A stretch of DNA of 64,000 bases from IMGVR_UViG_3300017963_000188:294039-358038, one strand, 5' to 3'. Positions 24,305 to 62,076 are shown, counted from the first letter of the stretch. A program made the numbers and translations. Notes: a model not told the origin generated them from the sequence alone.

Positions 24305-24679
24305 ATGGACAGAATATTGTTAGATTTTGATGGGGTCTTCAATCTTTATGAAGGGTGGGTACCAGGAGAAATACCTCCTCCCAGACCTGGTATCAAAGAA
24401 TTTTTGGAAGCTCTGAAAGACCAAGGTTACTCTTTGGTGGTTTTTACGGCTCGAACCCCTCTTGAGGATGTAGAGAATTGGTTGTTAAAAAACGATCTTA
24501 TGCTGTATATTGAAGATGTGACGAATATCAAGATACCAGCAAAGCTGTATATTGATGATAATGCCATTACCTTTAAGGGGGATTATGATACGGTACTGGA
24601 GCAGGTCAGTAATTTCAAACCATATTGGGAAGTGTCCAGTGGTTTGAGAGGGATAGCGAAACGGATATGGGCAAAGTAA
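24305..24679 (+). CDS. HAD-superfamily phosphatase (polynucleotide 3'-phosphatase/nucleotidase-like)
   Basis: LLDFDGV motif I, FTAR motif II, K.PAKLYIDD motifs III/IV. Confidence 0.8.
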   Translation: MDRILLDFDGVFNLYEGWVPGEIPPPRPGIKEFLEALKDQGYSLVVFTARTPLEDVENWLLKNDLMLYIEDVTNIKIPAKLYIDDNAITFKGDYDTVLEQVSNFKPYWEVSSGLRGIAKRIWAK

Positions 24680-25119
24680 AGACCAAGAAAATCTGGAATC
24701 CAAAATATAAAGAGGCAAGGGACCTTTTGGACCCCTATATTGACCTTGATAGAATGAAGTGGGACAAGTCTCTCAATAGTGGGACTCATTTTGTCCGTGA
24801 CATGGCTGCTGGAGGGTATCCGTTGGTTTTGAAGAAGGGTCGTACTTCGTATTTCTACAGTTTTGATTCGATGTTTGAACATCTGGTAGGTAAAGCAGGA
24901 GAACCAGCCTTAGAAAGAATCTTACCTCAAATTGGAAGAACTTGGGCTGATGTTTATAAGATAGTGGATGAGAATAGGATATCTGGGCTGATTTGCACAC
25001 ATAACCCTTCTCAGGATGAAATTGAAAAGGTTGTGGAAATTATGAAATCAGGTGCAGATCAGAAACCAAGTGAGATTTTATCGGGGATTAGGGATCAGGA
25101 AAAGGGACTATCTTCATAA
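24667..25119 (+). CDS. Hypothetical protein
   Basis: ORF overlapping the upstream stop. Confidence 0.5.
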   Translation: MGKVKTKKIWNPKYKEARDLLDPYIDLDRMKWDKSLNSGTHFVRDMAAGGYPLVLKKGRTSYFYSFDSMFEHLVGKAGEPALERILPQIGRTWADVYKIVDENRISGLICTHNPSQDEIEKVVEIMKSGADQKPSEILSGIRDQEKGLSS

Positions 25120-25931
25120 TCCTCATCTAGGTACTCTTCACTTTCGTTTTCTTCTTCCCAGTATTCGGTTTGCCTAGCATATGCATAAGGATCTACTGAG
25201 ACATTAAAAGCACTTTGCATACCTGATAAGATACCTAAGGGATCATCTTTGAATTCTTCTATAGCATCTTCTGTGGTGTAATCCATAGATCGATAACCAC
25301 TACCAGACATATATTCATGTATATCTTGTGGATTCATCATGATCTTAGTCTTAGAATCACCAATCTTGAAGTCTCCAACTAGTTGTTCTAGAGTCACATC
25401 GAGAAGGTCTCTACCATCAATTGATGCTATCCCTTCATCATGCTCAAAGAACAATCCATTCCTGTAGAAATATCGTATGTCACCGATCAAGTAGTCGAGA
25501 AGGTCTTGAGTTTTAACCATGACCGTCACTTCTTTTTCAGCCGCTACCCTAGCATTTTTAACGGCTCGTTTTACAGAGCTAGTTACCCCAGCTTCTTCTT
25601 CCATAGCTTTGAGTCTGGTATAATAATCAGGCACTTCTTCGAGGTGATCTTTGGCTATGGATTTTGCTATAGATCTATTGTCAGTATGTTCCAGTTCAAC
25701 TTCGATACCCATAGCTAACTCATTAGCATCAAATTCCTCATCAGTCATATGATCATGCTTACCAACATCATTGATGTAAGATGAGAGTAAGTTGTAGATT
25801 TCATTCTCTAGAATGTGGGGGTCTAATCCCAATTGAGTGGCAAGACCATGCACCATATCATCATTAGGGCTAGGGGTTTCAGTGAAAAATGTGATGATGC
25901 TATCTTCAACATCTGTCATTTGATTTGGCAT
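25095..25931 (-). CDS. DUF5661-like domain protein (acidic)
   Basis: ELAMGIEVELEHT...AK.IAKDHLEE.PDYYTRL..ME motif; AAGGAG RBS. Confidence 0.7.
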   Translation of the reverse strand: MPNQMTDVEDSIITFFTETPSPNDDMVHGLATQLGLDPHILENEIYNLLSSYINDVGKHDHMTDEEFDANELAMGIEVELEHTDNRSIAKSIAKDHLEEVPDYYTRLKAMEEEAGVTSSVKRAVKNARVAAEKEVTVMVKTQDLLDYLIGDIRYFYRNGLFFEHDEGIASIDGRDLLDVTLEQLVGDFKIGDSKTKIMMNPQDIHEYMSGSGYRSMDYTTEDAIEEFKDDPLGILSGMQSAFNVSVDPYAYARQTEYWEEENESEEYLDEDYEDSPFS

Positions 25932-26005
25932 TTTTGAACTCCTTTCATACTAACATGCTAAGATATAAAAAGGATATCGTCACCTCAACTTTTTTATTTT
26001 TTTAA

Positions 26006-26034
26006 TTTAAAAAACTGGATCTCTTCAGTATATA
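26006..26034 (+). promoter_or_regulatory. Phage promoter, sigma70-like (TTTAAA-N17-TATATA)
   Basis: One of seven copies with an exact 17-nt spacer, upstream of an RBS/ATG. Confidence 0.7.
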
Positions 26035-26071
26035 GAGATGGAACGAGAAACTAACACCAGGAGGTGACAAC

Positions 26072-60248: not shown

Positions 60249-60836
60249 GTGGCAAAACTGTATTTCAGATACAGTGCAATGAATGCATCAAAATCTGCAT
60301 CATTACTGATGGTGGCTCATAACTATGAAGAGCGTGATCAGAAAGTTTTGGTCTTGAAACCCATGATCGATGATAGAAGTGGAGGATACATAGAATCAAG
60401 GATTGGTTTGAAGCGTGAAGCTGATTTGCTGATTGAGCCTCACACAGATATCTTTGAGTGGGTCTACACTTTGGCTGGAGGTAAAGCTGCATGTCTTCTG
60501 ATAGATGAAGCTCAATTCCTTAGTAAATTTCAGGTGAAATGTTTGTGTCGTATCGTAGATGAATTGAATATTCCTGTCATTGCATATGGGCTTAGAACAG
60601 ATTTCCAAGGCAATCTGTTTGATGGTTCTATGTGGCTATTGGCCTGGGCAGATACAATAGAAGAGATCAAAACTATATGTGAATGTGGTAAGAAAGCAAC
60701 AATGAATATACGGTTGCTTGACGGGAAAAGAGTTCGAGAAGGGGATCAGATTCAAATTGGTGGTAATGAATCTTATCAAGCAGTATGTCGAAAAGATTTT
60801 CAACTTACCCCCCGATCCAAAAAATTCTTCGAGTAG
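60249..60836 (+). CDS. tdk: Thymidine kinase
   Basis: MAKLYFRYSAMNASKS, IESRIG, IDEAQFL, YGLRTDF, KTICECG, IGGNESY..VCR. Confidence 0.93.
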   Translation: MAKLYFRYSAMNASKSASLLMVAHNYEERDQKVLVLKPMIDDRSGGYIESRIGLKREADLLIEPHTDIFEWVYTLAGGKAACLLIDEAQFLSKFQVKCLCRIVDELNIPVIAYGLRTDFQGNLFDGSMWLLAWADTIEEIKTICECGKKATMNIRLLDGKRVREGDQIQIGGNESYQAVCRKDFQLTPRSKKFFE

Positions 60837-60837
60837 C

Positions 60838-60866
60838 TTTAAAAAATTGAAAACCTCCGGTATATA
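60838..60866 (+). promoter_or_regulatory. Phage promoter (TTTAAA-N17-TATATA)
   Basis: Motif copy with 17-nt spacer, followed by AGGAGGTG. Confidence 0.65.
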
Positions 60867-60884
60867 TCTACAGGAGGTGACGAT

Positions 60885-61061
60885 ATGGCTATCCATTTCA
60901 TTGGTAGTTGTGACCATAAGTTGGTTCCTGTTGGTAAGAAGTTTGGTACTGGTACAGCACTTCGTTGTGAGAAGTGCAAAATGGAGATGTTGGACTGCCC
61001 TGAAAACAGGGCTCGATTTGAGGTGAAGGATGAGAAAGTTAGCAACGATACGAAAGATTGA
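60885..61061 (+). CDS. 58-aa Cys/His small protein (not in the ORF track)
   Basis: AGGAGGTG RBS; MAIHFIGSCDHKLVPVGKKFGTGTALRCEKCKMEMLDCPENRARFEVKDEKVSNDTKD. Confidence 0.6.
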   Translation: MAIHFIGSCDHKLVPVGKKFGTGTALRCEKCKMEMLDCPENRARFEVKDEKVSNDTKD

Positions 61062-62076
61062 TGCTGTCAAGCCCATTGAAGGGGCAGACTTCATCGAAGT
61101 AGTAAAACTGGGTGGATGGCAGTGTGTTGCCTCCAAAGGTGAATTCCAGCCAGGTGATTTTTGTGTCTACTTCGAGATTGACAGTTTTCTCCCCATTGAG
61201 GAACGGTATGAATTTCTCCGTAAATCCAGTTACAGGAAGCTGGAAGAGCTGGAGGGTGGTCGAGGAGAAGGTTTCAGGCTTAGGTCTGTGAAACTCCGAG
61301 GTGAATTATCTCAGGGTTTAGCCATGCCATTGTCCAAATTTCCTGAGCTTGATTCTGTAGAAGAGGGAGATGAAGTCACTGAGATCCTGAAGGTGGAAAA
61401 GTGGGAACCTCCAATCCCTGCTTCTCTAGCAGGTGAAGTTCGGGGTATGTTCCCTGGATTCATCCCACAGACCGATGAGGAACGTATCCAGAATTTACCT
61501 CATTACTTTGAAGATCATCTTGACACTGATTTTGAAGTTACTGAGAAGATCGATGGGTCTTCTATGACTGTCTTCAAGACTGCCGATGACTTTGGTGTTT
61601 GTAGTCGTGGTCTTGATTTGAAATCAAGTGACAAGAATAGTTTTTGGGTGAAAGCCAAGGAGTTGAAACTACAAGAGTTGATGCAAGAGTTTGGTCGTAA
61701 TATAGCTCTTCAAGGTGAATTGGCAGGAGAAGGTATCCAAAAGAACCGTCTCAAAATTAAGGGGCATCGATTCTTTGTGTTCAATATCTGGGATATGGAC
61801 ATGAAGAGATACTTGACTCCTGATGAACGTAAGGATGTTATCAAGTGGTTCAAAGAAAAAACCCCTATCGATCATGTGCCTGTAATCCAGGAGTCTATGA
61901 AGGTATTTCAGGAACATGATATGGAGAGTCTCCTGGAATTTGCCGATGGGAATTCTGAAGTGAATCCTAAGATGCGTCGTGAAGGTTTGGTTTTCAAATC
62001 TCGTGTCGTGATAGGGAATCAAATCATTTCTTTCAAGTCCATTAGCAACAAGTATCTCTTGAAAACTGGTGATTGA
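61030..62076 (+). CDS. ATP-dependent RNA ligase (DRB0094/Rnl2-related) with N-terminal OB-like domain
   Basis: MRKLATIR.I....PI.GAD.IE, YFEIDSFLP, LRGELSQGL, TDEERIQN, TEKIDGSS, QGELAGEGIQKN, REGLV, FKSISNKYLL. Confidence 0.9.
   Translation: MRKLATIRKIDAVKPIEGADFIEVVKLGGWQCVASKGEFQPGDFCVYFEIDSFLPIEERYEFLRKSSYRKLEELEGGRGEGFRLRSVKLRGELSQGLAMPLSKFPELDSVEEGDEVTEILKVEKWEPPIPASLAGEVRGMFPGFIPQTDEERIQNLPHYFEDHLDTDFEVTEKIDGSSMTVFKTADDFGVCSRGLDLKSSDKNSFWVKAKELKLQELMQEFGRNIALQGELAGEGIQKNRLKIKGHRFFVFNIWDMDMKRYLTPDERKDVIKWFKEKTPIDHVPVIQESMKVFQEHDMESLLEFADGNSEVNPKMRREGLVFKSRVVIGNQIISFKSISNKYLLKTGD

What the first reader, a model, noticed from the sequence alone, without database searches (positions are those of the whole stretch)
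24305..62076. Redundant RNA-repair toolkit: Ro60/Y RNAs, RtcB, ATP-dependent RNA ligase and HAD phosphatase
Seen: RtcB (38815-40128), a DRB0094/Rnl2-type ligase (61030-62076), a small HAD phosphatase (24305-24679), Ro60 and one intact tRNA-Arg(ACG). Known: RtcB joins 2',3'-cyclic-P or 3'-P to 5'-OH, whereas ATP-dependent ligases need 3'-OH and 5'-P after end healing, and T4 uses Pnk + Rnl1 against PrrC. Inference: the phage encodes both repair chemistries, suggesting strong pressure from host RNA-cleaving defences and supporting a functional role for the array.
Basis: partly seen in the sequence, partly recalled or inferred. Interest (0 to 1): 0.6.

Follow-up and report, generated by a model that had tools for sequence, protein, structure and literature searches.

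The report
Jumbo phage RNA repair gene set
A 358-kb marine jumbo phage carries two chemically different kinds of RNA-joining enzyme, a Ro60 protein and eight Y-RNA genes, a gene combination already described for jumbo phages; the small HAD phosphatase listed with them shows no link to RNA repair.

Summary
The window is the last 64 kb of a 358,038-bp viral contig. It encodes an RtcB with all ten checked catalytic residues of E. coli RtcB. It encodes a full-length DraRnl/NgrRnl-type (Rnl5, not Rnl2) ATP-dependent ligase. It also encodes a Ro60 (TROVE+vWA) followed by eight tandem YrlA-like RNAs, and a tRNA-Arg(ACG).

The HAD gene is a real, motif-complete minimal HAD phosphatase. Fold, profile and neighbourhood evidence do not tie it to RNA ends. 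It closes a conserved DNA-replication module.

The rest of the genome adds an Rnl1-type ligase, an HNH-fused ligase, a 2H phosphoesterase, an RlaP nucleotidyltransferase, a CCA-adding enzyme, 49 more tRNAs and a tmRNA. I found no RtcA, archease, KptA or polynucleotide 5'-kinase. The T4-style heal-and-seal route is therefore incomplete on recognisable parts, while RtcB needs no helper.

Combinations of RtcB, Rnl1 and Rnl2 with TROVE, HAD, 2H, RlaP and CCA enzymes are already described for jumbo phages (Iyer et al. 2021). This is a new member of a known kind. The co-oriented Ro60 / 8 Y RNAs / RtcB block and the size of the Y-RNA array are the less ordinary features.

The parts
33210..33286 (+). 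tRNA-Arg(ACG), intact, with encoded CCA. It is a second copy, quite different from the tRNA-Arg(ACG) at genome 147686-147761.
   Evidence: ARAGORN; Rfam tRNA 66.2 bits; pairwise comparison of the two copies.
33403..35085 (+). Ro60/Rsr-like RNA-binding protein (TROVE + vWA), 560 aa.
   Evidence: PF05731 E 2.6e-16 and PF25045 E 3.9e-08; phrog_850 E 1.4e-55. The closest GenBank relative is the HGTV-1 TROVE protein, 36% identity over 86% of the query.
35094..35166 (+). Y-RNA-like unit 1. Short: terminal stem and inner stem, no tRNA-like module.
   Evidence: Shared 5' motif; fold -23.7 kcal/mol, z -2.6.
35182..35256 (+). Y-RNA-like unit 2. Short, no tRNA-like module.
   Evidence: z -4.4.
35269..35405 (+). 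Y-RNA-like unit 3, with a degenerate tRNA-like module. Its D-arm-like segment is 95% identical to that of the phage tRNA-Arg(ACG) at genome 147686.
35424..35565 (+). Y-RNA-like unit 4, with a permuted tRNA-like module (T arm, then a closed acceptor-like hairpin, then D arm).
   Evidence: Rfam YrlA 37.3 bits, model positions 1-114, E 1.6e-05, below the gathering score of 69; fold; arm matches to phage tRNAs.
35621..35763 (+). Y-RNA-like unit 5, with a tRNA-like module.
   Evidence: Rfam YrlA 36.5 bits.
35780..35919 (+). Y-RNA-like unit 6, with a tRNA-like module.
   Evidence: Rfam YrlA 37.5 bits.
35937..36082 (+). Y-RNA-like unit 7, with a tRNA-like module.
   Evidence: Rfam YrlA 30.5 bits (partial) and tRNA 32.5 bits (partial).
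36379..36512 (+). Y-RNA-like unit 8. It is separated from unit 7 by a small ORF (36105-36374).
   Evidence: Rfam tRNA 32.3 bits on its tRNA-like part.
38815..40128 (+). RtcB 3'-phosphate/5'-hydroxyl RNA ligase, 437 aa, no intein.
   Evidence: PF01139 full length, E 4.5e-63; phrog_1075 E 4e-121. It is 36% identical to E. coli RtcB, with D75, C78, N167, H168, H185, R189, H281, H337, R341 and R345 all conserved. It is the only copy in the genome.
61030..62076 (+). Rnl5-family (DraRnl/NgrRnl) ATP-dependent RNA ligase, 348 aa: N-terminal OB domain plus nucleotidyltransferase domain, with the KxDG lysine motif.
   Evidence: The lysine motif aligns to that of NgrRnl.
24305..24679 (+). Minimal capless HAD-fold phosphatase, 124 aa, substrate unknown.
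   Evidence: Motifs conserved in alignment A1; model pLDDT 88; fold neighbours are generic or minimal HADs; replication-module synteny.

Best explanation
The window holds part of the RNA repair and RNA quality-control equipment of a marine or sediment jumbo phage. The phage brings much of its own translation RNA: 50 tRNA genes and a tmRNA.

Shown at sequence level:
- A catalytically intact RtcB. This family joins 2',3'-cyclic-P or 3'-P ends to 5'-OH ends directly and needs no end healing.
- Three ATP-dependent RNA ligases of different families: Rnl5 in the window, and an Rnl1-type and an HNH-fused ligase elsewhere. These need 3'-OH and 5'-P ends.
- A Ro60 protein with eight Y-RNA-like genes in one co-oriented block with RtcB.
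- Accessory enzymes elsewhere in the genome: a 2H phosphoesterase, an RlaP nucleotidyltransferase and a CCA-adding enzyme with an HD domain.

Inferred:
- RtcB reseals tRNA, and possibly rRNA or tmRNA, cut by metal-independent host RNases such as anticodon nucleases and HEPN or colicin-like toxins.
- The ATP-dependent ligases seal breaks that already carry 3'-OH and 5'-P, as metal-dependent nucleases leave, or nicks in duplex regions. The kinds therefore cover different lesions and are not simple backups.
- Ro60 with its Y RNAs binds damaged or misfolded RNA and hands it to a partner. For a Thermus phage Ro60 that partner was shown experimentally to be host PNPase.

No polynucleotide 5'-kinase is recognisable, so a T4-like heal-and-seal route from 5'-OH ends is not established. 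The small HAD phosphatase cannot be assigned to RNA repair.
For: - RtcB.
- Rnl5.
- Other ligases.
- 2H phosphoesterase.
- RlaP.
- CCA-adding enzyme with HD domain.
- 49 further tRNAs and a tmRNA.
- Ro60 and Y RNAs.
- Ro60-RtcB proximity recurs in HGTV-1.
- RtcB co-occurs with Ro60 in 8 of 24 other Ro60-encoding viral records, against 694 of 50,697 phage records overall. The sampled records are biased towards large genomes.
- Literature: the same combinations and the 'not redundant, specialised' reading are given for jumbo phages in PMC7824862, section 3.4.9. YrlA RNAs next to Ro60 in bacteria and phages: PMC4201824. Phage Ro60, Y-like RNAs and host PNPase form a complex: PMC12135203. NgrRnl seals duplex nicks with an RNA 3'-OH strand: PMC4408790.
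Against: - There is no expression or activity data, and no RNA-seq run holds the stretch.
- Apart from Ro60 and RtcB, the parts are scattered over the genome and are not one operon.
- In 23 of the 24 other Ro60-encoding viral records, RtcB is absent or more than 10 kb away.
- No 5'-kinase, RtcA, archease or KptA was found.
- Rnl5 sits next to thymidine kinase and could serve nucleic-acid metabolism instead of tRNA repair.
- The host and its RNases are unknown.
Confidence: 0.65

Rival explanations
1. There is no coordinated toolkit. The genes are independent modules with different jobs. Ro60 and the Y RNAs hijack host PNPase for RNA decay or to interfere with host defence. Rnl5 seals RNA-DNA junction nicks during replication or repair. 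Only RtcB repairs tRNA.
For: - Phage phiLo Ro60 and its Y-like RNAs form a ternary complex with host PNPase (PMC12135203).
- Rnl5 enzymes seal duplex nicks whose 3'-OH strand is RNA (PMC4408790).
- Rnl5 lies 21 kb from RtcB, beside thymidine kinase.
- Other Ro60-encoding viral contigs mostly lack a nearby RtcB, and Ro60 often sits inside tRNA arrays instead.
Against: - Ro60, the Y RNAs and RtcB are co-oriented within 7 kb here and within 9 kb in HGTV-1. This mirrors the bacterial rsr-yrlBA-rtcBA operon (PMC7790460, listed).
- RtcB is enriched among Ro60-encoding viruses relative to its base rate.
Confidence: 0.3
2. One reading: the HAD at 24305-24679 is the 3'-phosphatase of a T4-like heal-and-seal pathway that feeds the ATP-dependent ligases.
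For: - All four HAD motifs are present, with an Arg two residues after the motif II Thr and a DD(N/R) motif IV. From my recollection of Wang and Shuman's mutational work, this resembles the T4 Pnk phosphatase signature.
- Atlas structural neighbours include kinase-HAD fusions at TM 0.66-0.77.
- Standalone HADs are proposed RNA-end phosphatases in jumbo phages (PMC7824862).
Against: - T4 Pnk is not among the 50 entries shown in each fold search. The best matches are uncharacterised minimal HADs, MDP-1, KdsC and a phage arabinose-1,5-bisphosphate phosphatase.
- hhalign against T4 Pnk gives 50% probability over motifs I-II only.
- phrog_415 scores E 0.049, and the best PHROG is phrog_1238, labelled 'phosphoheptose isomerase'.
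- The gene follows the helicase / primase / PolA module here and in a 68%-identical relative.
- Other homologs sit in a defence island or beside thymidylate synthase, never beside an RNA ligase.
- No partner 5'-kinase exists in the genome.
Confidence: 0.2
3. RtcB serves maturation of the phage's own RNAs, not damage repair. Candidates are processing or circularisation of the Y-RNA array transcripts, or splicing of phage tRNAs.
For: - RtcB lies 2.3 kb downstream of the array on the same strand.
- In HGTV-1, RtcB sits next to an intron-containing tRNA-Asp.
Against: - ARAGORN reports no intron in any of the 50 tRNAs of this genome.
- No known Y RNA needs ligation.
- The tmRNA gene and NAD-dependent DNA ligase suggest, but do not prove, a bacterial host, and bacteria are not known to have tRNA splicing endonuclease.
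Confidence: 0.1

Closest known systems
RNA-repair gene sets of jumbo phages (Iyer, Anantharaman, Krishnan, Burroughs and Aravind 2021, Viruses 13:63, section 3.4.9)
   Same: [quoted passage not shown] All of these classes are present here. The HAD's role remains open.
   Different: This phage has no near relative in GenBank phage records at the DNA level. It has no recognisable polynucleotide kinase, which that survey says usually accompanies the ATP-dependent ligases. The window's ligase is of the DraRnl/NgrRnl (Rnl5) family. Ro60 is followed by eight Y-RNA units and then RtcB.
Salmonella rsr-yrlBA-rtcBA RNA repair operon (PMC7790460; PMC4201824)
   Same: Ro60 (Rsr), Y RNAs with a tRNA-like module and RtcB are encoded together on one strand.
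   Different: No RtcA was found. An RtcR regulator was not searched for. There are eight Y-RNA units where Salmonella has two. Unrelated small ORFs and a dCMP deaminase lie between the array and RtcB. The locus is phage-borne.
T4 Pnk + Rnl1 repair of PrrC-cut tRNA-Lys
   Same: An Rnl1-type ligase with the lysine motif exists in the genome at 4121-5242.
   Different: No T4-type Pnk: the protein search, phrog_505 and AAA_33 all gave nothing significant. The Rnl1-type ligase lies outside the window. It is only distantly related to T4 Rnl1 (E 5.5e-09) and scores below the NCBIfam equivalog cut-off.
NgrRnl / DraRnl (Rnl5) nick-sealing RNA ligases
   Same: Full-length match with the same N-terminal OB plus nucleotidyltransferase architecture (E 1.9e-90). 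It scores above the TIGR02306 cut-off.
   Different: Phage-encoded. Homologs occur in 345 phage records. No in vivo substrate is known for any member.
Thermus phage phiLo Ro60 with Yrl1 and Yrl2 (PMC12135203)
   Same: A phage Ro60 with adjacent phage-encoded Y-like RNAs. phiLo Ro60 is a tblastn hit at 28% identity.
   Different: Two Y-like RNAs upstream in phiLo, against eight downstream here. phiLo has neither RtcB nor a PF09414 ligase.

Membership tests
RtcB RNA ligase | Full-length match to the RtcB profile | tested here: met
   PF01139 positions 1-425 of 426, 214 bits against a cut-off of 27.
RtcB RNA ligase | Metal-binding and GMP-histidine active-site residues (E. coli D75, C78, H185, H281, H337 and partners) | tested here: met
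   All ten checked residues are identical in the pairwise alignment with E. coli RtcB. The list of essential residues comes from my own knowledge of Shuman-lab mutagenesis.
RtcB RNA ligase | GTP- and Mn-dependent joining of 3'-P or 2',3'-cyclic-P ends to 5'-OH ends | not testable with these tools
   Needs a biochemical assay.
Rnl5 (DraRnl/NgrRnl) ATP-dependent RNA ligase | N-terminal OB domain followed by a nucleotidyltransferase domain with the KxDG lysine | tested here: met
   PF21189 covers residues 4-101 and PF09414 covers 167-326. The lysine motif aligns to that of NgrRnl. TIGR02306 scores 203.5 bits against a cut-off of 151.
   The OB domain is N-terminal and the whole length aligns to NgrRnl. 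Only a secondary hit to phrog_548.
Ro60/Rsr | TROVE (HEAT-repeat ring) domain plus C-terminal vWA domain | tested here: met
   PF05731 and PF25045 are above their cut-offs. The NCBIfam Rsr equivalog scores far below its cut-off (32 against 900 bits), so this is a divergent member.
YrlA-type Y RNA | Match to the Rfam RF02553 covariance model at the gathering score | tested here: not met
   Best units score 36.5-37.5 bits against a gathering score of 69, although they cover the full model length at E about 1e-05.
YrlA-type Y RNA | A 5'/3' terminal stem, a tRNA-like module with the T arm before the D arm, and a position within 4 kb of Ro60 | tested here: met
   Folds. T-arm matches lie 5' of D-arm matches in units 4-8. 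Stem sequences differ between units while pairing is kept, by direct reading. The array starts 9 nt after the Ro60 stop.
T4-type polynucleotide kinase-phosphatase (end healing) | P-loop 5'-kinase domain | tested here: not met
   No hit with the T4 Pnk protein, phrog_505 or AAA_33. The Walker-A ORFs are dNK, helicases, ATPases or proteins of unknown function.
T4-type polynucleotide kinase-phosphatase (end healing) | HAD 3'-phosphatase domain of the Pnk clade | tested here: inconclusive
   HAD motifs are present. However, phrog_415 scores E 0.049, hhalign gives 50% probability over motifs I-II only, and T4 Pnk is not among the 50 entries shown in each fold search.
Bacterial rsr-yrlBA-rtcBA operon | RtcA cyclase encoded with RtcB | tested here: not met
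   PF01137 is absent from the whole 358-kb contig, while the control genomes gave hits.

The most novel reading that the evidence does not exclude
The Ro60 / eight Y RNAs / RtcB block could be a phage-borne, expanded counterpart of the bacterial rsr-yrlBA-rtcBA operon. In this reading the eight different Y RNAs act as a panel of adaptors. Two lack a tRNA-like module and six carry distinct ones. Each would tether Ro60 to a different partner, such as host PNPase, RtcB, the CCA-adding enzyme or tRNA-modifying enzymes, or would act as a decoy for tRNA-directed host defence proteins. That would physically couple RNA triage to RtcB-mediated repair during infection.
Probability: 0.12. Interest if true: 0.7.

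Novelty: new member of a known kind. Interest (0 to 1): 0.35.

Why it matters
The phage is another uncultured example of jumbo phages protecting their translation RNAs with several non-equivalent RNA ligases. It links Ro60 and Y RNAs physically to RtcB in a virus, as in the bacterial Rtc/Rsr operon. That makes it a compact candidate for testing whether Ro60 and Y RNAs feed broken RNAs to RtcB.

Three corrections matter for anyone who annotates or counts 'RNA repair' genes in phage genomes:
- the ligase family is Rnl5, not Rnl2;
- there is no 5'-kinase;
- the HAD is unassigned.

As a class of system, it is already described.

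Tried and rejected
- Near-identical DNA search in GenBank phages: no match.
- Deaminase at 37180-37635 as a TadA that would edit the neighbouring tRNA-Arg(ACG): rejected. It is ComEB/dCMP-deaminase-like at 128.7 bits, and TadA scores only 26 bits.
- HAD as the phosphatase domain of T4 Pnk: not supported.
- Search for a 5'-kinase with AAA_33, the T4 Pnk protein, phrog_505, a Walker-A scan of all ORFs, and Pfam, PHROG and PDB scans of candidates. I found only dNK, Tmk, TK, helicases, ATPases and one P-loop protein of unknown function at genome 8314-8991.
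- RtcA, archease and KptA: absent.
- Promoter and terminator consensus scans of 32000-42500: no more sites than in shuffled sequence, so uninformative.
- Expression: no RNA run holds the stretch. The contig 'joints' have 20-22-nt sides. I take them to be tRNA-like segments of other organisms.
- Burroughs and Aravind 2016 (NAR 44:8525), which defines the 'Swiss-army-knife' HAD family, is not held in the library. I therefore could not test whether this HAD belongs to that family.
- Paralog search: RtcB, Ro60, Rnl5 and the HAD are each single-copy in the genome.

Full report
**Where the window lies.** The window is the last 64 kb (294039-358038) of a single 358,038-bp IMG/VR viral contig with 40.6% G+C. 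CheckV estimates it as complete, and it has no end repeats. It has no near DNA relative among 50,697 GenBank phage records. The same stretch is held by a sediment and a seawater metagenome run. In both, a 46,166-nt contig covers 33100-37492 without a difference, though the two runs may be one data set filed twice. A tmRNA gene and an NAD-dependent DNA ligase suggest a bacterial host. The closest RtcB is in a 735-kb uncultured phage, followed by Bacteroides phages, at 41-44% identity.

**Checking the observation.** Five of the six listed items are real and sit at the stated coordinates.
- RtcB (38815-40128) matches PF01139 end to end at E 4.5e-63. It is 36% identical to E. coli RtcB. The residues corresponding to D75, C78, N167, H168, H185, R189, H281, H337 (the guanylylated histidine), R341 and R345 are all conserved. 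The list of essential residues comes from my own knowledge of the Shuman laboratory's mutagenesis.
- The ligase (61030-62076) has the PHA02142 N-terminal OB domain and the PF09414 nucleotidyltransferase domain. It passes the DRB0094 equivalog model at 203.5 bits against a cut-off of 151. It aligns over residues 1-346 to the Naegleria NgrRnl crystal structure at E 1.9e-90, including the lysine motif. It is therefore an Rnl5-family enzyme, and the added label 'Rnl2-type' is wrong. Homologs occur in 345 phage records.
- Ro60 (33403-35085) carries the TROVE and Ro60-vWA domains.
- tRNA-Arg(ACG) (33210-33286) is intact.
- The Y-RNA array is described in a later section.
- The sixth item, the HAD, is real as a fold but unproven as an RNA enzyme. 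It is treated next.

**The HAD (24305-24679).** Family models score it below their cut-offs. Even so, 35 homologs of 108-151 aa exist. In a 26-sequence alignment the catalytic set is conserved or invariant: DxDG, the motif II Ser/Thr followed by Arg, the motif III Lys, and DD. The AlphaFold model (pLDDT 88) is a capless Rossmann-like HAD core.

The evidence does not connect it to RNA ends:
- Foldseek's best matches are uncharacterised 121-124-aa proteins (2obb, 1xpj), KdsC, MDP-1 and a phage arabinose-1,5-bisphosphate phosphatase.
- hhalign against T4 Pnk gives 50% probability over motifs I-II only.
- The Pnk-phosphatase PHROG scores E 0.049. The best PHROG is phrog_1238, labelled 'phosphoheptose isomerase'.
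- Actinophage homologs annotated 'polynucleotide kinase' are themselves just small HADs.
- The gene follows the helicase / DnaB / primase / PolA module. The same order is kept in a contig encoding a 68%-identical homolog.
- Other homologs lie in a defence island or beside thymidylate synthase. None lies beside an RNA ligase.

Some leads point the other way. Atlas structural neighbours include kinase-HAD fusions at TM 0.66-0.77. Capless HADs often act on macromolecular substrates, which I state from general knowledge. I put the RNA-end phosphatase reading at about 0.2.

Found:
- a CCA-adding enzyme with an HD domain, 79236-80594;
- an Rnl1-type ligase, 4121-5242, matching T4 Rnl1 at E 5.5e-09 with the lysine motif;
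- an HNH-ligase fusion, 100538-101551, phrog_24030 at E 2.5e-124;
- a 2H phosphoesterase domain at the N-terminus of a 336-aa protein, 75670-76680;
- an RlaP nucleotidyltransferase, 83961-85049;
- 49 more tRNA genes and a tmRNA between 92 and 150 kb.

Not found: RtcA, archease, KptA, and any polynucleotide 5'-kinase.

The phage therefore does encode both ligation chemistries, with three ATP-dependent ligases and not one. A T4-like healing step for 5'-OH ends is not recognisable. RtcB needs no healing. The ATP-dependent enzymes can act directly only on 3'-OH/5'-P breaks, or after healing by an unrecognised or host kinase.

**The Ro60 / Y RNA / RtcB block.** Eight units start 9 nt after the Ro60 stop, at 35094-35166, 35182-35256, 35269-35405, 35424-35565, 35621-35763, 35780-35919, 35937-36082 and 36379-36512.
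- They share a 5' motif that occurs nowhere else in the genome.
- Each folds into a terminal 5'/3' stem and an inner stem, with z-scores from -2.2 to -4.4.
- The stem sequences differ between units while pairing is kept, by direct reading.
- Units 4-8 hold a permuted tRNA-like module: T arm, closed hairpin, then D arm. This is the YrlA layout (PMC4201824).
- Three units match the whole Rfam YrlA model at about 37 bits, below its gathering score of 69.
- Relatives of this Ro60 in IMG/VR carry a single YrlA-like RNA upstream of Ro60, and phiLo has two. Eight is therefore an expansion.
- All genes from 32291 to 42035 are on the + strand. Small unknown ORFs and a dCMP deaminase lie between the array and RtcB.

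**Co-occurrence.** Twelve other Ro60-encoding IMG/VR contigs were searched. The five that are 200 kb or longer, all from one lineage, carry RtcB, and four or five of the twelve contigs carry a PF09414 ligase. The shorter fragments carry no RtcB.

Twelve diverse GenBank Ro60 phages were also searched. RtcB is present in three (HGTV-1, SRB7757, CcrColossus) and a PF09414 ligase in seven. This compares with 694 RtcB-positive records among 50,697 overall, but the sampled records are biased towards large genomes.

Adjacency is rare. Only HGTV-1, which is also the closest Ro60 relative, has RtcB, an intron-bearing tRNA-Asp, Ro60 and a nucleotidyltransferase co-oriented within 9 kb. In several contigs Ro60 lies inside a tRNA array.

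**Comparison with what is known.** Iyer et al. 2021 (PMC7824862, section 3.4.9) already state the following for jumbo phages:
- some Rnl2 ligases are fused to HNH domains;
- a subset carries TROVE proteins;
- HAD, 2H, RlaP and CCA-adding enzymes accompany the ligases;
- the ligases are 'probably not redundant'.

The bacterial rsr-yrlBA-rtcBA operon (PMC7790460) and phage Ro60/Y-RNA pairs (PMC4201824, PMC12135203) are also known. This finding is a new member of a known kind. Its less ordinary features are the eight-unit Y-RNA array, the co-oriented Ro60 / array / RtcB block, and the absence of a recognisable kinase.

**Verdict.** Interest is 0.35.

Noticed in passing
window 35094-36512: Eight tandem Y-RNA-like units follow Ro60. 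Related viral Ro60 loci show one YrlA-like RNA (L014 3931-4033, L019 2146-2265) and phiLo has two. Units 1-2 lack the tRNA-like module. A small ORF (36105-36374, 89 aa, no family) separates units 7 and 8.
   Followed up: partly
window 26072-29732: A DUF6744 protein (26072-26962), a MoxR-type AAA+ ATPase (27073-28221; bpMoxR E 5e-57) and a vWA protein (28317-29732) lie in a row. This is a MoxR-vWA pair of the kind described in conflict systems, here in a phage. DUF6744 is also kept next to the HAD in the related contig L033.
   Followed up: no
window 40221-42035: Immediately downstream of RtcB lies a 604-aa protein with collagen repeats, CFSR, DUF7151 and a receptor-L domain. It is probably a fibre or surface protein and unrelated to RNA repair.
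   Followed up: no
window 37180-37635: A dCMP deaminase (ComEB-like) lies between the Y-RNA array and RtcB. I tested whether it is a TadA that would edit the neighbouring tRNA-Arg(ACG), and rejected that.
   Followed up: yes
genome 75670-76680 (outside the window; L032 1405-2415): A 336-aa protein has an N-terminal 2H phosphoesterase domain, with weak similarity to the anti-CBASS protein Acb1 (E 5e-4). Its C-terminal half of about 175 aa has no family match. It could be an end-healing enzyme or an anti-defence cyclic-nucleotide phosphodiesterase.
   Followed up: partly
genome 4121-5242 and window 61030-62076: The Rnl5 ligase lies 2 kb from the right contig end and the Rnl1-type ligase 4 kb from the left end. 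If the genome is circularly permuted, they are only about 7 kb apart.
   Followed up: no
genome 92241-149462 (outside the window): There are 49 tRNA genes covering all 20 amino acids and a tmRNA (tag ANDNALPMAA), all on the minus strand. The HNH-ligase fusion sits among them.
   Followed up: partly
L017, L021-L025 (IMG/VR contigs): In other large viral contigs the Ro60 gene sits in the middle of arrays of 16-24 tRNA genes. This suggests a recurrent Ro60-tRNA gene association in phages.
   Followed up: partly
L015 9450-9578; L016 3555-3683: Weak 'tmRNA' covariance-model hits (about 24 bits) lie about 400-550 nt upstream of Ro60 in two related contigs. They are probably tRNA-like Y RNAs and not tmRNAs.
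   Followed up: no
L050 (HGTV-1, NC_021328 62000-75000): This archaeal virus has RtcB, an intron-containing tRNA-Asp, Ro60, an HNH endonuclease and a nucleotidyltransferase co-oriented within 9 kb. No YrlA hit was found there at E 0.01 or better.
   Followed up: partly
genome 8314-8991 (L028): A 225-aa Walker-A protein (phrog_23621, unknown function) has no Pfam or PDB match. It is the only unassigned small P-loop ORF and so the only obvious candidate for a divergent kinase.
   Followed up: partly
window 51457-53469, 60249-60836: An NAD-dependent DNA ligase and a thymidine kinase are present. A dNK (105931-106584) and a thymidylate kinase (genome 85575-86213) lie elsewhere. The phage has a broad nucleotide-salvage set, which is an alternative context for a small phosphatase.
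   Followed up: no
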